Source: Blastocladiella emersonii ATCC 22665 (Eukaryota > Fungi > Blastocladiomycota). From it: a stretch of 64,000 bases of DNA. The position numbers were made by a program, and so were the translations under genes. Shown in pieces: positions 12,671 to 63,435 of this stretch. The stretch spans positions 868,001 through 932,000 of the forward strand of contig JANHCV010000010.1 in assembly GCA_025594325.1 (NCBI GenBank), given 5' to 3'. Each line of letters opens with the position of its first letter. The first letter of the stretch is position 1. The notes under the pieces were generated by a model. That model was not told the origin of the DNA. It saw nothing but the letters and a program-made list of their open reading frames with translations, and did no database searches.

Positions 12671-13220
12671 CTTTGGTTTGCGCAAGTGCTGCAAGGTGTG
12701 GTCTATAGTGATACGAGGCGGGGAAGGAGGAAGGGGCGCGGGTTAGCGATCCACGGAGGCCGAGGGGGGTCGGCTGGGTCATGGCGATGGAGACGCGTAA
12801 TGAGACGCGCGAGACACAACACGCGTCGGGCTGTTGGGAGACATTTTCGTGACCGCGAGACGGAACGCGACAATCAGTTGTCATATGAGCGTGCGAACAG
12901 TCATTCACGCGCGCCACGTTCGCCACCAGATTTTGGGCAGCAGCAAAATCGGCGATAGTGTGGAACGAGGTCGTCCCTCGTGCTGCGCCACCTGGCTGCT
13001 GTGCCACCCAGCTGTTCGCGGCCAGACCACCGACATGACCGAGTGCAGTTTCCCTATTCCCTACAACTTGCCCACTGTCTCCCGCTCGCGGCCTCACCTT
13101 CAGTCGAGATCAGCGTGCCAGCGGCCTTCGAATTGAGTGTCCATGATGTACTCAGGTCGGGAACGGAGCTCCCGATCTACTCGGACTGCTACTCCATGAA
13201 TCCGCTCAATGAATGCCAAC

Positions 13221-15736
13221 ATGTATCGCCGCGTGCTTGAGGTCGCTGCGGTCTTCTTCTTGTTTCTATGCGCGGCGAACGCGGTCAGCACTGAGCGGCG
13301 CATCTCGGCCACCTGCATCCCGCGGTCCGACGCGGCACGGTTCGGCTACGTGCTGGCGCAGGACGGCGCCGACGTCGTTCGCCGCGCCTACCCGAACGTC
13401 ACGTTTGAGTCTGGAGCGTGGGCCTCGTACGTAGCCACCAGCCGTTGTTCTTCGGCTGGACGCCGGACCCCGTCACTGCCATCCACGACATGGTCCGCGT
13501 GAACCTGCCCAGCTACACGACCGCCTGCTGGACGGCTTTCAACATGACCGCGGCGGGGACTTCGTCGACGCGACTCACCTGCGACTGGCCCGTCGAGATG
13601 CTGTAGAAACTCGCGAGTCCGGTGGTCATGGACGCGATCCCACACCTTTCGAAGATGCTCCGCGAGTTCACAATCACCGAGGACACGTTGCGTGGGCTCC
13701 TCGCCGAGTTGCCAAACGCGAACGGCCAGGCCTACGACGTCGCGTGCGACTGGCTGCGTGACCACGGCGCCGTGTGGGAGCCGTGGATCGGAGCGCCGCT
13801 TGCGGATCATGGTACGCGTTCGTGGTCATTATGATCGCGCTCGTGGTCTTCATGTCGCACCGTGTTCACCTCGAGTTCGTCATGTGGCTCGTAGTCGTCC
13901 CGATTCGCACCAACAGCTCGTCGGATCTCGACGCCATCCTCATCATTTGTATCGCCTCGCTCATGGCCGTCCTTGCCGTGGCCGTTCTCGGCGCCACCTG
14001 GCGGTCGCGGAACCAGCCAAGCCTCCGTGTTCAGTCGCCCGCCCTACTCGCGCTTCAGATCGTTGGAGCCCTCGTGTTCGCGCTCAGGCTCGCCGTTCCA
14101 GCCGTCACGGGCGCATCGTCGGGCGCACCGTGCATCGTGCGTGCGTGGCTCATGTCGCTCGGCCTCGTCACTATACAGTTCGCCACCGCGGCCCGGCTGT
14201 GGCACGTCTACGCCATCATAGCAAACGTGTCGTGGTCCGTAACGGTAGTCCACTTCGGCCGACTCACGACGGTCCGTGGCACGACTAACCGCCAGCTCGT
14301 GGTCGCGTTCGTGTTCTTCGCCATGCTTTGCGCCGCTTCACTCGCTCCGTTGACGGTGACCATCGCGCCTTCTGGCGCGGCCATGATCCTCCTCGACATG
14401 TCGCCGGCCGCGTACGCCCGCGCACGCCCGCGTTTGTCCTGCTCCACCGCTATGGGCCGTGGCCATCCCTTTCGCGCTCATTCACGTTCCGCTCGCTGCG
14501 GCCACCGCATGGCTCTCGTCCCGGACGCGCAACTCGATCACCATGGCGAGCGACGCTGCGCCGCAAGGGTACCAGCACCTCGCAGTCGGTATCGCCGCGA
14601 GTGTCGGGATGCTACTCGGTGACCCGAGGCTGCAGCACGTCCACCTGTGGGTCGTCCCAGCACTCACGACGACGCTGACCATGATCCTCCACACTGCGGC
14701 TCTTCCCGTCGCCCTCGTCGTGCTCACGGTCACATCGGCACCCACACGTCTCGTGCGCAAACTTCCATCAAGTGCGAGCAGCGGTGCGGGAGGTCTCGGC
14801 GTCAATGGCGTCAGTGGTGCGACGGCTGCGTCGGGTGCTCGACTCGCCGTGAGCTTGGCGTACTCGGCTCCAAGCCGACGCGGTAGCCTGCCGCATACGC
14901 ACCAGTGGTGGCCTCAGCCCATCATACCTCCGCCAGCACAGGAGGAGCCAGAGGTCGTGGTCGAGCCCATGCCCGGCGCAATGGACACGGACGTATCTGA
15001 AGAGCAGCAGCCCGAGCTTCCGACCGACCTGCCGCCAAGAAACATCTTCGGCACAAACCGCTCGTCCACGTTTGGCACAATCCGGCGTCGTGCGGACGAC
15101 GTGCCCAAGCCCGGCGCCATCACCATCATGCTGAACGCGGACGACACGTCAAGCGTGTGAGTCGCGCCCGATCCGTCCGAATCCACTCCGGGCGCGAGCT
15201 CGTTTGTCGCTCCTGCTGGCGGCGAGCAGCTACCACAGCAGCCAACCCGGCTTCTCTCAACCGCGCTCTACCGCGACGAATCCAGCATCTCGCTGTACCC
15301 GACTTCTCTCGTTAGCTCCGGCGCCGTGCAGCACGAGTGGGCGCGGAGCTTCTAGACCTCGCACTCGGACCGCAGCCCCACAACGCTCCTCGCGCAACTT
15401 CCCGTCTCCAGCACGCGCGAGCCAATCGCTGTCCACCGCACGCGGTGGCCGTGGAATCCGTGGGCCGCTGGGTTTGCTGTCGTGATCCCGAGCCTGCGGC
15501 TGGTCGGCGTCATCCCAACCGCCATGCATGGCGTGACGCCGCGCGGAACCGCGTTCTGGATGCCGGGTAAGGAGGTAGTGTATGTCACGGTACGTTTCGA
15601 CGCTGTCGTCGACCGCTCGGGTCGCGCGAGCGTCCGGGTAGTGCGTGGCAGTCGAGCAGAGTACGAGATCGAGCTTCCCTCCGCGCAGTCGGCGGAGCTG
15701 TGGGTCGCCGCTGCTGAAGAACTTGCTAGAGTGTAA
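13221..15736 (+). pseudogene. Decayed tandem paralogue of the solute-binding-domain/class C 7TM/PH-like receptor at 16257-19396
   Basis: Collinear with 16257-19396. About 660 bp of ectodomain are missing just after the intron-1 donor (about 13427-13445). CAG>TAG at 13604, frameshift near 14450, TGG>TGA at 15158, and further frameshifts before the final IPSLRLV...EELARV segment. Confidence 0.85.
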
Positions 15737-16256
15737 TCTGATGATTTGACTGTACTATTTGCCCTCAAGAACACTGCCATTTAACGATCTCGTCGGCTCA
15801 GCCACGCTATTGCGTTCCGCGCAGAACGGTGGTCGGAACGCGTCGCGTTTCAGGCCCACGTGAGGGATCTGATCGGCTTGCCCACGCTCAACGAAGCGCA
15901 ACCCGCCGTTCCAAGGCGTTAAAGCGATTTGAGGGTGGTGTTGGCTTAAGTAATCCACGGAGTCTCAAAGACATGGAGCGAGCATGTTCGGGGACGCGTC
16001 CTGAGGCAGGAGGTGCGCACCAAGGCTTTGGGAGACATTTCGCGATGACGAAACATGAGTGACCGCGTGTCCTCCCTGGCTCCATGCCGCCCGGGTCGTT
16101 TCGCAAGGATCCGGCACTTTGGCTCGAGCACTGTCTCCCAGTCGGGCCATTCCTGGCGATCGAGTGGAACGCTCTGCCTGGATGGTAAGGCCTGAATCTA
16201 GCCAGACCCTGATCCACCCGATGCAAGACTTCATGCAAAGCTCCATGCAATAAGAA

Positions 16257-19200
16257 ATGTATCCTCGCGCGGTCGCAGTCGCAGCATCCATATTCTTGCT
16301 TCTCTGTGTGTCAACTGCCAGCAGCGTCGAGCGACGACTGCCGTACACTTGCATCCCGCGAGCCGAGGCCGCGCGGTTTGGCTTCGTTGAAGCCCAGGAC
16401 TCGCTTGACGTCGTGCGTCGCGTCTACCCGGCTATCACGCTCGAGTCGCACTCTTGGACCTCGTACGCCTCCAGCCGTAGCACAGGTCTGACTGTTCGGT
16501 CCACTGACAACTGGATGTGGTAGATCAAATGTGACCAACTTCATTGGCGCGATTCTCGCTCGCGACATCCTCGGCCTCGACGTGCGCGTCGTCGAGCGCG
16601 ACGCTCCGTTCGGCATTTACACGCGGCTTGTGAGTGGCCAGGTCTCGGCGGCGCTCGAGATCTGGCCCGTCAATAAGGTCAAGCTGTATCTGCAATACGT
16701 TACGATCGCGCGCACGGTGCACGACATGGGTCAAACCGGGTACACGGGCGTCACGATGTGGAGCTTTCCCGCCACGATCTCGGCGCAGCACCCGGGCATG
16801 ATCTTCGAGTCGTGGCGCTCGCTCCTTCAGCCCGAGACGCTCGAATTGCTTCCACTCGCCGGCTCCACGCCACCGGCGCGTTTAGCCGACGGAACCTTCG
16901 TCTGTACCGTGTCCTGGTGCGCCAACGGGGTTTACACGCCGCCGCAGTGCCAACCCGGCGGCACATGGGCCGGCCGCTGTCGCGAGATGTGGCACATGAA
17001 CCCCGGCGTCAATCCGGGCGAGTCAGAGCAGATGATCCACGACCTTGGCCTTCCCATCGTCGTCGTGTACCTCGGCGCAAGCTACGATTCCCGCGTGACG
17101 GCGTGTCTTGCCGCCGCGAGCCCGACGCAGACCTGCCTCATCTTCGGTTGGACGCCGTTCGCAGCGACAGCAAACTTCGGCCTGCTGCGCGTCAACTTGC
17201 CGAGCTACACGACTGCGTGCTGGTCCGGGTTCAACATGCAGTTTGCTGGGACCTCGTCGACACGCCTTGATTGCGCATGGCCCGTGGAACTGCTGCAGAA
17301 GCTTGCCGGCCCGACCGTCATGGACGCGGTCCCTCAGCTCGCGGCCATGATCCGAGCATTCACTATCACTGAAAGCACGCTCCAAGGTCTCCTGTCCCCG
17401 CTCACGTCGGACAACGACCGGACTTTTGACGTGGCGTGCGAGTGGGTGCGCGATCACGCTGCCGTGTGGAGTCCTTGGATCGCGGCTCCTCCAGCGGATC
17501 ATGGTACGAACTCTTGGTCCACGCCGCGTAATTCAAACTCACCCATGCTCTCCTCCGCTATGTGTAGTCGTACCGTTCCGCCGCACGAGCTGGTCCGACC
17601 TGGACATCTCCCTCATCACCTTCGTCTCGGTTTCTGCTGCAGTCCTGGCTGCGCTTGTGCTCGCCGCGATCTGGCGCTACCGCAAGGAGCCGAGCTTACG
17701 CGTCCAGTCGCCCGCGCTGCTCTCGCTCCAAGTCTGCGGTTCACTCCTCTTTGTGCTTGGCCTCGCGCTTCCCGCGTTTGTAGCCATCGCTACGGGCGCG
17801 TCGTGTATCTCGCGCGCATGGCTCGTTTCACTCGGCCTCGCCACGGTCCAATTCGCCACTGCGGCCCGGCTGTGGCGAGTCTACGCCATCATCGCGAACG
17901 TGTCGTGGTCGGCGGTCCTCTTTGGCCGACTCGTGACGATCCGCGGAACAACGCATCGTCAGCTCATGGTCGCTCTTGCTATCCTTGTCCTCATCGGCGC
18001 CTTTGCTCTTGGCCCGCTGACGGCCGCTCTCATTCGATCGCCCATCAACCCGATACTACTCAACAGCACTCCTCTCGCTTACGCTCACGTTTGCTCGACC
18101 CCGCCCCTCTGCGCCGCCGCGATCCCCGTTGTCCTCATTCACATCCCGCTCGGTGCGGGCACCGCCTGGCTTACGTCACGTACCAAGCACTCGATCACTT
18201 TGACGAGTGACGCCGCGCCGCAGGTGTACAAGCACCTCGTGGTCGGCATCGCTGCGAGTGTCGGACTGCTTTTCGGCGAGCCGAGGCTTTACCTTGTCCA
18301 GCTGTGGGTCGTTCCAGCGCTCGCGGCCACGCTGACGATGCTCTTCCAAACTGCCGCTTTCCCTGTTGCGCTGGTCGCTCTAACCTCGGCCACAGCTCCA
18401 GGCCGACTCGTGCGCAAACTGCGCTCGAACGCCAGTAGCGGCGGCGGTGGCTGTGGGCCGGCGGATTCGGTGACCCAGTCCGTCCCGGGTTCGAACTACT
18501 CGGCTCCTTCGCGAGTGAGCGGTCCGTCCCCAGCAATCACGACCCGCTGGTGGTCTCGGAACAACGTTATGCGGACACAGCAGGATTCGGATGTCGCTTC
18601 CAAGCCCGCGCCCGGCCCAAACGATCCGCTGTCGTCGCTCTCACCGTCGGCCGCTTATCCTAGTCACGTGCGGATGAGCGTGTTCGGCTCGCTGCTCTCG
18701 TCCAAGTTCAACACCGTGCAACGCCGCACGGCCGGCCCGGTGGAGCCTGGCGTGATCACCATGATGCTGGACGCCGACGAGACCGCGAGCGTGTGGGTTG
18801 CCGCCGACCCTGCCGAATCTACTCCGTCTGCCGCTACGCATCCGTCCAAGGACATCGGCGGCGGCGACTCGCTTTCGCAGCAGCCGAGCCGGCTCAAGGC
18901 GAGTGCGCTTTACCAGGAAGATTCGACGGTGTCCACGTCTGTGGCTGTTCTCTCGAGCGCGGATGACGTCCGAGCGACCTGGGCACTCGGGAACCAGAGC
19001 GTGCTACCGCTCCGCAGCTCGTCCAAGCCGACCACGCTGCTCGCACAAGTCCCAGTCATGAGCACGCGGACGTCGGTCTCGATTCGTCGCGCGCGGTGGC
19101 CGTGGACGCCCTGGACCGCTGGATTCGCTGTCGTCGTACCTTCCTTGCGGCTCGTGGCGATCATTCCGGCTGCTGAAGGTGGCACAGCGCCGCGCGGGAC

Positions 19201-19396
19201 TGTGTTTTGGGTTCGCGGCCGGACCTCGGCCACCGATCTCGCGTTCGTTTCCATAACCGACAGCAAGGGCAGAGGAAGCGTCCGCGTGCGCCGCGGCGAC
19301 CGAACGCTCTACGAGATCGAGTTTGATTCTGCGCAGCAGGCGCAGCAATGGGTCGCCGCCGCGACTGAACTGGTCACGGTGGCCGGGGCCGAATGA
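16257..19396 (+). CDS. Receptor: signal peptide + OpuAC/ProX-like (type II) solute-binding domain + class C-like 7TM + PH-like C-terminal domain
   Basis: Introns 16463-16523 and 17504-17567 give one open frame. Ectodomain motifs SWTSS, GAILARDILG, LEIWP, FGWTP and AFTITESTLQGLL...ACEWVRDH..VWSPWI. TM3 CISRAWLVSLG...ARLWRVYAIIAN matches the 7tm_3 pattern. C-terminal YEIEFDSAQQAQQWVAA. Confidence 0.8.
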
Positions 19397-60716: not shown

Positions 60717-63435
60717 ATGAAGCAATGTATCTCCTGCACTTTATGCATCGTCGCCGTGGCCCTCTCGCTGATATCTGTGGCCAACTGCGCCGCGATCGCA
60801 GACAGACCGATCCGCATGCTGTTCTGGGCATGGGGCGGCGAGACGGCGCTGTTCCAGGCCCACTTTGACGAATGGACCAACACCTCGGGGATCAAAGTGC
60901 AGGTCGACGTGCCACGCGTGTCTGGCGGAGCGACCGCGGATGAGTACTTTGGCATGCTCAAGGCCATGGAGGACCAGAGAATCGCGTATTACGATATCGT
61001 AGTCCTCGACGTGACCTGGCCTGCGCTGCTTACCACTCTACTCTTGCCGCTTGACGGTCTGGTCGACGCGAGTTCCATAGCGGTTCATGATCAGAGCTTC
61101 GTCAACGAGGCGCGGGTCGGCGGCAAGCTTTACGCGCTCCCGTACACGACCACCATGTCGCTGCTCTACTACCGCGCCGACATTCTCGCCGACTATGGTT
61201 ACACTTCAGCGCCGCAAACGGTACGTTCCGTTAGTGAGACAGACGAGCGAGAAATTGGCAGCCAACACGAGTCTACCGTATAGTGGGACGAGATGGAGGG
61301 CATGCTCGAGCGCATTTTGCCCAGCGAGCAGACCAAGCGACCGGGCTTCCACGGATACGTTGGCCAGCTCAAGGCGTTCGAGGGTCTCACGTGTAACGCC
61401 ATGGAGCTGCTTGGCAGCTACGGCGCGGGCACCGTCGTGGAGCCCGACGGCTCCATCTCCACCGCCAACTCGACGCGGCGGGACGCGGCCGTGGCCGCCA
61501 TGACGCGGTTCCGCAGCTGGGTCACGCGCGGGTTCATCCAACCGTCGGTGCTGACCATGGACGAGGTGCCTGCTTACAATGCTTGGTTTTCGGGAAATGC
61601 GCTGTTTATGCGGAACTGGTTCTACGGTAACTTTCCCGTTGACTTTACATCGGGGATCGCACCATTACCCGGTAACACGCCCGACCTCGCCGGCTTTACG
61701 ACCAACGCCGCGAGCTACTTTGGGATCAACCGGTTCACGGCCGACCCGATCCGCACGGCAAAAGTGCTTGAGTTCATCACGGGCACAGAGTCGCAGCGCA
61801 AGTGGGCCGCTGAGCTCAGCTTCATTCCGACTATCAAGAGCGTGATTCAAGGTGCGTGCTTTGTCGCGTATCACTTCACGATCGCTGACATTACCGACGT
61901 GTGTAGACGAGTCGATCTGCACCATGCTCGGCAGCTGCAACGTCAGCGGCAAGTTGCGGATGGTTTCCCGCCCCGCTCTTGCAACGGGCTCGTCGTACCC
62001 TGCCGTGTCCGAGGCCATCATCAACGGATGGAGGCAGGCCTTCAGCGGATACCTCACACCTGCGGCCGCTGTGACGCGGCTGACCCGCCGGCTCGCGGCC
62101 ATTCTGTCCATCGACATTCTCGGACCTCCTGTCGTGGTTCAGTGGACGGACTTTTCCGGGATCGTGACCATCATTGCGTTCGTTATCGCCGAGGTTGTGG
62201 TTGTCGCGTCCACGGTGGCGCTTGTCCGCCACAAGCGCTCGGCGCTCGCGCGTCGCGTCTCGTTCCGCTTGCTTCTCTCAATGCTTGGCGGGCTTGCCGT
62301 GACGGCGGTGTGGCCGCTGCTCTTCATCGGCCAGCGCACCGGGCTTCAATGTTTCTTGCAGATCGCCATCCTCGCTTGCGCTTGGGCCGTGATTCTCGCA
62401 TGCATGGCTGTCCAGGACTTGCGCGTCTATCTCATTGTTTCGAGCCCGCTGCGTCGCGTCGCCAGTGACGTGACTCGAGTCCTGCGCGCATTCATCATCG
62501 TCGTCATCTTGCTCCAGTGTCTCGGGCTGCTCATGTGGGGGCTCGTCAGCCCGCCGTCGGCGGCCATGTACGTCGTGGCTGACGAGTGGGAGTACCTTGC
62601 GTGCTCGGAAGGCACAACACCCGAGCTTCTCGCGATCCCAGCCTCGGTTGTTGCTGCTCTCGTCGCACTAAACATGTGGCTCGCGTATCGCTCCAAGGCC
62701 AGCGAGGTCGTCATGACCAAGCGACAGTCGCCGACGCTTCAGATTCTCTACGCGATTTGTCTCATCACGGTCATCCAGGTACATCTCTCGAGTATGACCG
62801 GCCACTCGCTCCCACGGTTGCTGACGTTAACGCGTGTGTAGGGTATTTCCCTCAAGATCCCCCAACTCACACCTTCGGCTTGCTCTCTCATCTTCGCCAT
62901 CACCACACTTGTCCTCGTCGCGACCGTGTGCAAGGTTTACATTCTCCACCAGCTGGAGCCGGACTCGGAGGATACTACAAGCCCGTGGCTGGGCATGACG
63001 CGCGCGGGCACCGAATCCTCATTCGGCACTAACGTGGCCTCAACTCCGTCGAGTATCCATGCACCAGGCTCCATGCACCGCGACTTGTCACCAACGAGCG
63101 ACTGCACGCCCTGCTTTTCGATCGCCACAGCCGACTTGGCGCTGCGCACCGCCGCGTCGTCGTTTTTCGTGGAGCTGACGCCCTGTGTACCGTGTCAGCT
63201 GCAGTTGTTCACTCGTCAGGCAGTGCTGATCGCGACCGAGGTCTCGGGCCGCCGGCGTTACCGCGTGGCCATCGCCTTGCGCACGCTCGCTGCGGTGGAG
63301 TTTGCATCCGCGTCACAGACTTGCTTGCGCCTCCAGTTGCGCGGCCGTGTCGTTGACGTGGTCGGACCCACGGCGACGCTCGCGCAATGGAAACAGGCGT
63401 TGAGCGAGTTTGTTCGCGAGGAACCGGGGCATTGA
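60717..63435 (+). CDS. Receptor: signal peptide + sugar-binding SBP family 1 (type II) domain + class C-like 7TM + PH-like C-terminal domain
   Basis: Introns 61221-61283, 61852-61906 and 62779-62841 give one open frame. YDIVVLDVTWP, GKLYALPY....LLYYRADIL..YGY..APQTWDEM, YVGQLKAFEGLTCN and GNALFMRNW. TM2-3 LLFIGQRTGLQCFLQ...DLRVYLIVSSP; ECL2 WEYLAC. Confidence 0.85.

What the first reader, a model, noticed from the sequence alone, without database searches (positions are those of the whole stretch)
16257..19396. Class C-like GPCR using a bacterial glycine-betaine/ProX-type (type II) binding protein as ectodomain
Established: animal class C GPCRs use a type I Venus-flytrap domain and Dictyostelium Grl receptors use Bmp-type domains. 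Seen: after splicing, one chain has a signal peptide, an OpuAC/ProX-like type II fold (SWTS, LEIWP, FGWTP and ACEWVRDH..VWSPWI motifs, plus a Cys-rich insert CTVSWC...PPQC...C), a 7tm_3-like bundle, and a long tail. Inference: an ABC-transporter substrate-binding protein repurposed as a GPCR sensor, possibly a zoospore or gamete chemoreceptor for betaine, choline or amino-acid-like solutes. This is the best candidate for an undescribed system, together with 60717-63435.
Basis: partly seen in the sequence, partly recalled or inferred. Interest (0 to 1): 0.85.

Follow-up and report, generated by a model that had tools for sequence, protein, structure and literature searches.

The report
Betaine-type binding domain fused to GPCR
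This is an intact three-exon gene of the water mould-like fungus Blastocladiella emersonii for a class C G-protein-coupled receptor whose outer sensor is a bacterial-type betaine/TMAO-binding domain; the design is real but was already catalogued in related fungi in 2012 and 2014, and nobody has tested what it senses.

Summary
Window 16257-19396 (+) is a three-exon gene with two short GTACG...TAG introns. It encodes 1004 aa: a signal peptide, a ProX/OpuAC-type (type II) solute-binding ectodomain, a class C 7TM bundle, a disordered stretch of about 215 aa, and a C-terminal PH-like domain.

The ectodomain model (pLDDT 95.7) matches TmoX, DmpX, OpuAC, ProX and ChoX. The family profile hits TmoX (4XZ6) at E=1e-50. 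It keeps three cage tryptophans and one phenylalanine (W67, W116, W278, F276). It lacks TmoX's TMAO-specific Glu and one aromatic wall. The 7TM region passes Pfam 7tm_3, and all of the top 50 structural matches listed are class C receptors, with GABA-B2 first.

The novelty claim fails. OpuAC+7tm_3 receptors were reported in Allomyces macrogynus (Krishnan 2012) and described as conserved across distant eukaryotes (de Mendoza 2014). I found at least 8 paralogues in this genome. Relatives occur in Catenaria, Allomyces, seven chytrid genera and a labyrinthulid. The scan also noted a paralogue elsewhere in this genome (s1-265345).

No ligand, transcript or signalling data exist. The public gene model (H9P43_007765) is chimeric.

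Verdict: new member of a known but functionally uncharacterised kind.

The parts
16257..16462 (+). Exon 1, residues 1-68 plus 2 nt of codon 69. It holds the signal peptide (about residues 1-23), conserved C32, and the first strand of the binding domain with cage Trp W67 (16455-16457).
   Evidence: The ATG follows an in-frame stop. There is a hydrophobic N-terminus. The exon aligns without gaps to the N-termini of paralogues P0002, P0003 and P0005, and an equivalent exon sits upstream at 13209. A Trp stands at this column in 61 of 66 family members.
16463..16523 (+). Intron 1, 61 nt: GTACGC donor, CTGAC branch-like site, TAG acceptor.
   Evidence: Sequence. The NCBI model P0001 uses the same acceptor. 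The reading frame is restored and the junction SWTS|SNVT is conserved in paralogues. There is no RNA evidence.
16524..17503 (+). Exon 2, residues 69-396: the bulk of the TmoX/ProX/OpuAC-type type II solute-binding domain. It holds cage residues W116 (16663-16665), F276 (17143-17145) and W278 (17149-17151).
   Evidence: Pfam OpuAC E=4.8e-4. Family profile vs 4XZ6 TmoX E=1e-50. AF2 pLDDT 95.7. Foldseek top hits are TmoX, DmpX, OpuAC, ProX and ChoX.
16885..16995 (+). Cys-rich insert inside the binding domain (residues 190-226; C196, C201, C211, C221).
   Evidence: It is absent from TmoX in the profile alignment. An insert of 22-54 aa, carrying 2-4 Cys in nearly all rows, is present in all 49 fused or eukaryote-type rows of A2. 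It is replaced by a 7-12 aa loop in 17 short bacterial-type SBPs. The model is confident there.
17504..17567 (+). Intron 2, 64 nt: GTACGA donor, TAG acceptor.
   Evidence: Sequence. The NCBI model P0001 uses the same junction, ADH|VVPFRR. The junction is conserved in P0002.
17568..19396 (+). Exon 3, residues 396-1004 plus the stop: short linker, 7TM, disordered tail and PH-like domain in one open frame.
17597..18394 (+). Class C (7tm_3) seven-helix bundle, residues 406-671. It has the TM3-ECL2 cysteines C475 and C571 and a beta-hairpin in intracellular loop 2 (residues about 509-520).
   Evidence: Pfam 7tm_3 at 40 bits vs cutoff 33.5. PDB sequence hits to GABA-B2 at E=4e-5. AF2 predicts 7 helices. 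The Foldseek top 50 are all class C receptors. AFDB matches are Dictyostelium Grl proteins, GABA-B2 and other class C receptors. C475 and C571 are nearly invariant in A3.
18419..19054 (+). Low-complexity, predicted disordered cytosolic region (residues about 680-891). It contains a conserved GVITMMLDADE motif.
   Evidence: pLDDT is below 50. The motif is shared with P0002 and P0004.
19073..19390 (+). C-terminal PH-like domain (residues about 898-1003): seven strands plus a terminal helix with conserved W991.
   Evidence: AF2 gives strands 502-584 and helix 588-607 at pLDDT 73-95 by 10-residue block. Atlas feature hits go to PH-domain clusters with score 0.90, which is a lead only. Similar tails occur at 15482-15736, in P0003 and in P0005. 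No separate structural search was done.

Best explanation
Window 16257-19396 (+) is an intact three-exon gene of Blastocladiella emersonii ATCC 22665 encoding a 1004-aa class C (Glutamate/GABA-B-like) GPCR. Its extracellular sensor is a type II solute-binding domain of the TmoX/ProX/OpuAC family, not the type I Venus flytrap of animal class C receptors. SHOWN: the domain order; the fold of both modules; retention of three cage tryptophans and a phenylalanine (W67, W116, W278, F276), which correspond to OpuAC's Trp prism and to three of the four box Trp (W55, W102, W222) plus Phe220 of TmoX's pocket; a very short linker (about 15 residues, no NCD3G cysteine-rich domain, as in GABA-B); the TM3-ECL2 cysteine pair; and a PH-like cytosolic end. 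INFERRED: a small cationic ligand with a trimethylammonium or dimethylsulfonium head (betaine, choline, carnitine, proline betaine, DMSP-like) sits in the cage between the two lobes. TMAO is unlikely, because TmoX Glu131 is Thr146 here and Trp177 is Val231. Lobe closure would pass through the short linker to a probably dimeric 7TM bundle, which would activate a heterotrimeric G protein. The PH-like tail would tether or scaffold at the membrane. The gene belongs to a blastoclad-expanded family, with at least 8 paralogues in this genome, whose architecture is already published but not characterised.
For: Gene model. Organism: P0001 (NCBI H9P43_007765) contains the exon 2 sequence exactly. Ectodomain: Pfam OpuAC E=4.8e-4 for this protein, and 1e-12 for its sister paralogue P0002. 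The family profile hits TmoX 4XZ6 at 1e-50, DmpX 7YLE at 2e-32, OpuAC 2B4L at 5e-21 and ProX 1R9L at 2e-12. AF2 gives pLDDT 95.7 and pTM 0.91. Every Foldseek PDB hit listed (top 50) is a betaine/choline/TMAO/DMSP/ergothioneine-type binding protein or a relative or engineered derivative. Cage mapping uses the TmoX residue list in PMC8918994 and the alignment; positions were verified. 7TM: 7tm_3 at 40 bits, above the 33.5 cutoff; GABA-B2 at 4e-5; seven helices; the top 50 structural hits are all class C. Family: 33 of 44 long multi-TM homologues hit OpuAC and 27 of 44 hit 7tm_3. Members are named in Blastocladiella, Catenaria, Allomyces, chytrids and Hondaea. Literature.
Against: No transcript evidence shows that the three exons form one mRNA. 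The single-sequence OpuAC Pfam score is 1 bit under threshold. One aromatic wall is Val231 here, where 54 of 66 relatives have Y, W or F, and the H-bonding Glu of TmoX is missing. The pocket may therefore take a different ligand or none. W67 lies in exon 1 and was not in the structure model, so cage geometry was not checked in 3D. TM6-TM7 fall outside the Pfam match, and the class C FxPKxY motif appears as FPV. This motif is recalled from memory and was read by eye, so it was not tested. G-protein coupling, dimerisation and expression are untested.
Confidence: 0.75

Rival explanations
1. The receptor is real, but its ectodomain is not a betaine/choline-type sensor. The altered pocket (Val231, Thr146, Lys120) would bind a different small molecule, such as an amino acid like proline, leucine or lysine, to which Allomyces zoospores are attracted. 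Alternatively it binds nothing and serves as the silent partner of a heteromer, as the GABA-B2 flytrap does.
For: Three of the seven TmoX pocket positions differ. Only 2 of 66 family members have Val at position 231. At least 8 paralogues in one genome make heteromers possible. Allomyces zoospores chemotax to Leu, Lys and Pro through unknown receptors (bioRxiv 10.1101/165027).
Against: The three tryptophans that suffice for the OpuAC Trp prism are all kept, and they are nearly invariant across the family. Every solved relative in the fold search that is listed with a natural ligand binds a trimethylammonium, sulfonium or betaine-type compound.
Confidence: 0.25
2. The locus is not one functional gene. 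The binding-domain exons and the 7TM exon would be separate or decaying units in a tandem array undergoing birth and death, like the truncated copy immediately upstream.
For: The upstream paralogue (13209-15736) has lost most of its binding domain and shows a frame change in the 7TM region. The public annotation could not model the locus cleanly. No RNA data exist.
Against: There are 1004 codons without an internal stop across three frames, joined by two canonical and mutually similar introns. All family-conserved Trp and Cys residues are intact. The same contiguous architecture is annotated independently in B. britannica, Catenaria, Allomyces and chytrids. The junctions are gap-free against paralogues.
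Confidence: 0.07
3. The 7TM module does not signal through G proteins. It would act as a ligand-regulated scaffold, as GPR158 does with RGS7-Gbeta5, with output through the PH-like tail and phosphoinositides.
For: GPR158 and GPR156 are among the top structural matches. TM6-7 and the PKxY-type motif are divergent (motif read by eye). The tail ends in a PH-like fold. Two relatives carry RGS domains.
Against: The closest sequence and structural matches are G-protein-coupling GABA-B2 chains. A G-alpha subunit group that includes the blastoclad Allomyces macrogynus is reported (PMC3971589).
Confidence: 0.15

Closest known systems
OpuAC-7tm_3 'Glutamate family' receptors of Allomyces macrogynus (Krishnan et al. 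2012, PMC3251606; architecture noted as conserved in de Mendoza et al. 2014, PMC3971589)
   Same: The domain architecture (PF04069-type ectodomain plus PF00003 7TM) and the fungal phylum (Blastocladiomycota) are the same. An A. macrogynus relative, AMAG_01758 (P0010), was found directly at E=3e-59 with 42% identity.
   Different: This is a different species and paralogue. Those papers catalogued Pfam domains only. They did not describe the TmoX-like cage, the Cys-rich insert or the C-terminal PH-like domain. No member has been studied experimentally in the literature searched.
Metazoan GABA-B receptor (GB2 subunit) and Dictyostelium Grl receptors
   Same: They are the best sequence and structural matches for the 7TM bundle. 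Like GABA-B, this receptor joins its binding domain to TM1 by a short linker without the nine-cysteine NCD3G domain (no NCD3G hit).
   Different: Their ectodomains are type I (ANF_receptor) or Bmp folds. Here it is a type II ProX/OpuAC fold. The tail carries a PH-like domain instead of the GABA-B coiled coil. TM7 lacks the PK motif.
TmoX (TMAO-binding protein of Ruegeria pomeroyi, PDB 4XZ6) and the ProX/OpuAC/ChoX/DmpX cluster F-III binding proteins
   Same: This is the best match to the ectodomain by profile (E=1e-50) and by fold. Shared features are W55/W102/W222/F220 = W67/W116/W278/F276, the C301-C319 cysteine pair, and the C-terminal W..W..W helix motif.
   Different: The ectodomain is not a free periplasmic protein of an ABC importer. 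It lacks TmoX Glu131, Trp177 and Phe106 (Thr146, Val231 and Lys120 here). It carries a 37-aa four-cysteine insert and extra cysteines (C32, C374) that 17 bacterial-type relatives lack.
Class C GPCRs with type II solute-binding domains in anaerobic gut fungi (Seppala et al. 2016, PMC5168858)
   Same: A fungal class C 7TM is fused to a type II bacterial-type binding domain, without ANF or NCD3G domains. Those were seen in transcriptomes.
   Different: Those domains resemble sugar-uptake binding proteins rather than the betaine type. The sugar-type design is the one seen in this window's other receptor at 60717-63435 (SBP_bac_1 + 7tm_3).

Membership tests
Class C GPCR (Pfam 7tm_3, PF00003) | Seven-helix domain scoring above the PF00003 gathering threshold | tested here: met
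   40.0 bits vs cutoff 33.5, E=4.8e-10, exon-3 residues 8-204 on profile positions 3-189 of 251. TM6-7 lie outside the match.
Class C GPCR (Pfam 7tm_3, PF00003) | 7TM fold closest to solved class C receptors | tested here: met
   AF2 predicts 7 helices. The Foldseek PDB top 50 are all class C (GABA-B, GPR156, GPR158, CaSR, mGlu, TAS1R), with TM-score by target up to 0.72 on TMD-only chains.
Class C GPCR (Pfam 7tm_3, PF00003) | Conserved TM3-ECL2 cysteine pair | tested here: met
   C475 and C571 are nearly invariant in the 43-row alignment A3. The disulfide itself is inferred.
Class C GPCR (Pfam 7tm_3, PF00003) | Type I Venus-flytrap (ANF_receptor) ectodomain and NCD3G cysteine-rich linker | tested here: not met
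   There is no ANF_receptor or NCD3G hit. The ectodomain is type II OpuAC-like. GABA-B also lacks NCD3G, and the fungal members described in PMC3251606 lack both.
Class C GPCR (Pfam 7tm_3, PF00003) | Dimerisation and G-protein activation | not testable with these tools
   Needs biochemistry.
ProX/OpuAC substrate-binding proteins (PF04069, cluster F-III, type II) | Sequence match to PF04069 or to solved family members | tested here: met
   The single sequence scores 20.2 bits vs cutoff 21.2, marginally below. The family profile A2, headed by this protein, hits TmoX at 1e-50, OpuAC at 5e-21 and ProX at 2e-12. Paralogue P0002 scores 48.6 bits.
ProX/OpuAC substrate-binding proteins (PF04069, cluster F-III, type II) | Two-lobe type II fold | tested here: met
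   The AF2 model has pLDDT 95.7. 75 PDB matches reach E<=1e-3. The top hits are TmoX, DmpX, OpuAC, ProX, ChoX, OpuBC and EgtU, with TM-score by target 0.65-0.76.
ProX/OpuAC substrate-binding proteins (PF04069, cluster F-III, type II) | Aromatic (Trp) cage for a quaternary ammonium head group | tested here: met
   W67, W116 and W278 correspond to OpuAC W178/W225/W72 and TmoX W55/W102/W222. F276 corresponds to TmoX F220. The fourth TmoX Trp (W177) is Val231. The 3D geometry including W67 was not modelled.
ProX/OpuAC substrate-binding proteins (PF04069, cluster F-III, type II) | Free or lipid-anchored partner of an ABC importer | tested here: not met
   The domain is covalently followed by a 7TM receptor in the same reading frame after a 64-nt intron.
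Fungal OpuAC-7tm_3 receptors (Krishnan 2012) | OpuAC-type N-terminal domain and 7tm_3 in one protein of an early-diverging fungus | tested here: met
   Homologues with both Pfam domains are frequent: 33 and 27 of 44. They include Allomyces and Catenaria proteins. On the tree the window gene lies in a blastoclad clade with 98% support.

The most novel reading that the evidence does not exclude
The blastoclad receptors may form a three-part signalling unit not yet described: a TmoX-like quaternary-amine sensor, a class C 7TM and a cytosolic PH-like domain. It could be a zoospore chemoreceptor for osmolyte-type or decay-derived amines. Its Cys-insert-bearing ectodomain may be one ancient eukaryotic sensor module that was shuffled onto GPCR, guanylate cyclase, kinase, phosphodiesterase and ion-channel chassis.
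Probability: 0.3. Interest if true: 0.6.

Novelty: new member of a known kind. Interest (0 to 1): 0.35.

Why it matters
Class C GPCR pharmacology and mechanism are understood only for type I flytrap ectodomains. A receptor that drives the same 7TM bundle with a type II betaine-type domain through a very short linker would test how general the clamshell-to-7TM coupling is. It could also identify a chemoreceptor of fungal zoospores, whose receptors are unknown. It offers a natural eukaryotic sensor scaffold for quaternary amines. The design itself has been in the literature since 2012. The value here is narrower: a corrected gene model, a concrete ligand-class prediction from the retained Trp cage, and the note that the public annotation of this locus is chimeric.

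Tried and rejected
1. RNA support for the splice model. No B. emersonii RNA run is served. Laying the one offered rhizosphere metatranscriptome at 80% likeness gave only pieces of about 40 nt, almost all under 90% alike, with no joints, so it is uninformative.
2. A first donor guess for intron 1 (GT at 16486) was rejected because it breaks the frame. GTACGC at 16463 restores the frame and matches intron 2 and the paralogues.
3. The search for homologous proteins with the 7TM region returned only the chimeric NCBI model. The exhaustive representative search was needed to find the family.
4. NCBIfam gave nothing for either module.
5. jackhmmer with the C-terminal tail against all fetched proteins found only P0001 (which contains this gene's own tail) and the C-terminal end of B. 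britannica P0004. A five-row tail alignment was poor. The PH-like call therefore rests on AF2 topology and Atlas leads only.
6. Recent horizontal transfer from bacteria was considered and rejected. The blastoclad ectodomains form a well-supported clade of their own, and all eukaryote-type members share an insert that the bacterial-type proteins lack.
7. A full-length model including exon 1 could not be made, because spliced sequences cannot be passed by reference. The 3D cage geometry with W67 was not checked.
Full report
WHAT IS THERE

The window is GC-rich eukaryotic DNA. An NCBI protein of Blastocladiella emersonii ATCC 22665 (H9P43_007765, P0001) contains the exon 2 translation exactly, so the window comes from that genome.

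On the + strand three long open frames follow one another in different phases. Reading the junctions gives two introns. Intron 1 is 16463-16523, 61 nt, GTACGC...CTGAC...TAG. Intron 2 is 17504-17567, 64 nt, GTACGA...TAG. Joining 16257-16462, 16524-17503 and 17568-19396 yields 3015 nt, which is 1004 codons with a single terminal stop. The ATG at 16257 follows an in-frame TAA.

Both junctions align without gaps to paralogues. SWTS|SNVT matches AWASANVT, AWSSSNLT and VWPSSNLT. PPADH|VVPFRRTSW matches PPADHVVPIRRASW. The NCBI model uses the same intron 1 acceptor and the same intron 2.

No RNA evidence could be obtained. No B. emersonii RNA run is served, and the one metatranscriptome offered gave only chance scraps.

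THE ECTODOMAIN

Exon 2 alone gives a sub-threshold OpuAC hit (PF04069, 20.2 bits vs 21.2, E=4.8e-4). It also gives a weak hit to PDB 4XZ6 (E=0.01).

An exhaustive search found 416 relatives at E<=1e-3. A 66-row alignment headed by this protein (A2) was used as a profile against the PDB:
- TmoX 4XZ6: E=1e-50 over its full length
- DmpX 7YLE: 2e-32
- B. subtilis OpuAC 2B4L: 5e-21
- ChoX, lactococcal OpuA, and E. coli ProX 1R9L: 2e-12

AlphaFold2 with A2 gives pLDDT 95.7 and pTM 0.91. Foldseek against the PDB returns only this family: TmoX/TMAO, DmpX/DMSP, OpuAC, ProX, ChoX, OpuBC and EgtU. The domain is therefore a type II, cluster F-III binding protein fold.

THE LIGAND POCKET

The TMAO pocket of TmoX is Trp55, Trp102, Phe106, Glu131, Trp177, Phe220 and Trp222 (PMC8918994). 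Using the alignment, with positions checked, the mapping is:
- Kept: W55 to W67 (exon 1), W102 to W116, F220 to F276, W222 to W278.
- Changed: F106 to K120, E131 to T146, W177 to V231.

The three retained tryptophans are also the OpuAC Trp prism (W178, W225, W72). I worked this out from the spacing of the aligned motifs and from my recollection of the OpuAC residue numbers in the literature.

Across A2 these positions are Trp in 61, 65 and 55 of 66 rows. Position 231 is aromatic in 54 of 66 rows. Val there is rare, and the nearest paralogues have Leu.

My inference is a cation-pi cage for a trimethylammonium or dimethylsulfonium head group. The tail specificity would differ from TMAO. W67 was not in the model, so the 3D geometry is unchecked.

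EUKARYOTE-SPECIFIC FEATURES OF THE ECTODOMAIN

A 37-aa insert with four cysteines (C196, C201, C211, C221) interrupts the fold where TmoX has a short loop. In A2 every fused or eukaryote-type row has an insert of 22-54 aa, carrying two to four Cys in nearly all rows, and a Cys at the position of C374. All 17 short bacterial-type rows have a 7-12 aa loop and no Cys at position 374. C301 and C319 are shared with the bacterial proteins. C32 in exon 1 is conserved in the family consensus. A C32-C374 disulfide is my inference.

THE 7TM AND TAIL

Exon 3 passes Pfam 7tm_3 (40.0 vs 33.5 bits). It matches GABA-B2 chains by sequence (E=4e-5).

The AF2 model (43-row alignment A3) shows the following:
- seven helices at exon-3 residues 10-275
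- an ECL2 hairpin
- an unusual ICL2 hairpin
- a disordered stretch at 284-495
- a confident seven-strand plus C-terminal-helix domain at 502-607

The Foldseek PDB top 50 are all class C receptors: GABA-B2, GPR156, GPR158, CaSR, mGlu and TAS1R. AFDB/Swiss-Prot gives Dictyostelium Grl proteins and GABA-B2. C475 and C571, the TM3 and ECL2 cysteines, are nearly invariant. No NCD3G domain is present. The linker from the last ectodomain helix (WSPWIAAPP) to TM1 is about 15 residues, as in GABA-B.

The C-terminal domain has PH-like topology with a conserved Trp in the last helix. Atlas feature hits go to PH clusters with score 0.90, which is a lead only. I did not run a separate structural search for it.

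DISTRIBUTION AND HISTORY

Of 44 long multi-TM homologues, 33 hit OpuAC and 27 hit 7tm_3.

Named members:
- Eight B. emersonii genes: H9P43_007765, 009109, 007535, 001971, 004764, 003522, 006426 and 003500
- B. britannica
- Catenaria anguillulae
- Allomyces macrogynus (AMAG_01758) and A. javanicus
- The chytrids Podochytrium, Phlyctochytrium, Zopfochytrium, Chytriomyces, Polychytrium and Obelidium
- The labyrinthulid Hondaea

On a quick ML tree the blastoclad ectodomains form one clade (SH-aLRT 98). The window gene is sister to H9P43_009109 (SH-aLRT 99). The chytrids form another clade (SH-aLRT 100). The bacterial-type proteins form one clan together with the Hondaea 7TM row. The tree is unrooted and was built with a quick search, so it gives no direction of transfer.

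COMPARISON WITH THE LITERATURE

Krishnan et al. [quoted passage not shown] De Mendoza et al. 2014 say OpuAC-7tm_3 is conserved in distant eukaryotic lineages. Seppala et al. 2016 report type II SBP-class C GPCRs in gut-fungal transcriptomes.

A full-text search for OpuAC together with eukaryotic receptors returns only the first two papers as relevant. The B. emersonii genome paper mentions GPCRs only in general terms.

The architecture is therefore known, and its function is untested. Allomyces zoospores chemotax to amino acids through unknown receptors. This keeps the chemoreceptor idea open but does not support it specifically.

VERDICT

The structural interpretation is right. The claim of an undescribed system is not. 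This is a new member of a known but uncharacterised kind.

What this analysis adds:
- a corrected gene model
- the TmoX-like cage mapping and a ligand-class prediction
- the eukaryote-specific Cys insert
- the PH-like tail
- the finding that the public model of this locus is chimeric

Noticed in passing
window 13209-19396 (NCBI H9P43_007765 = P0001): The public gene model is chimeric. It starts in the last part of the upstream paralogue's binding domain and runs through that copy's 7TM and tail. It then splices into exon 2 of this gene and removes this gene's TM2-TM7 and part of the tail as 'introns'. It omits exon 1 of both genes.
   Followed up: partly
window 13209-15736: The upstream tandem paralogue has a matching exon 1 (signal peptide, CIPR..., GAWAS) but lacks about 250 aa of the binding domain. 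Its frame changes within the ECL2 region of the 7TM (ORFs 13774-14622 and 14459-15160 overlap in different frames). It looks like a decaying copy. It keeps the PH-like end (15482-15736).
   Followed up: partly
window 60717-63435: A third receptor in the window has a different type II ectodomain: SBP_bac_1/SBP_bac_8 (sugar type, E=4.6e-9) followed by 7tm_3 (53.7 bits) and a similar C-terminal module. Krishnan 2012 also lists this architecture for Allomyces.
   Followed up: partly
P0029, P0053, P0054, P0056, P0066, P0071, P0077 (homologues of exon 2): The same TmoX-like ectodomain is fused in other eukaryotes to other chassis. Where it was checked in A2 (P0053, P0054, P0056, P0066) it carries the four-Cys insert. 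The chassis are receptor guanylate cyclases with a kinase-homology domain (Capsaspora XP_004364868, Chromosphaera), a receptor protein kinase, a PDEase_I phosphodiesterase and an iGluR-like channel. This suggests one eukaryotic sensor module shuffled among receptor types.
   Followed up: partly
P0123, P0133, P0067, P0088, P0118: Some long relatives combine the OpuAC-like domain with a second ectodomain. Two have ANF_receptor (a type II plus type I tandem). Three have Ephrin_rec_like cysteine-rich repeats, one of which (P0118) also has a sub-threshold TIR_2 hit. Two of the 44 multi-TM homologues scanned carry an RGS domain.
   Followed up: no
window 17906-17941 (residues about 509-520, SWSAVLFGRLVTIRGTT region): The AF2 model puts a beta-hairpin in intracellular loop 2, the loop that contacts G proteins in class C receptors. 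The sequence is conserved in P0002, P0003 and P0004 but deleted in P0005.
   Followed up: no
window 16350-16352 and 17437-17439 (C32, C374): C374 is present in every eukaryote-type A2 row and in none of the 17 short bacterial-type rows. An N-terminal Cys matching C32 appears in the family consensus. The two may form a disulfide tying the N-terminus to the last helix, next to the membrane linker. C263 and C273 form another candidate pair, seen in only 11 of 66 relatives.
   Followed up: no
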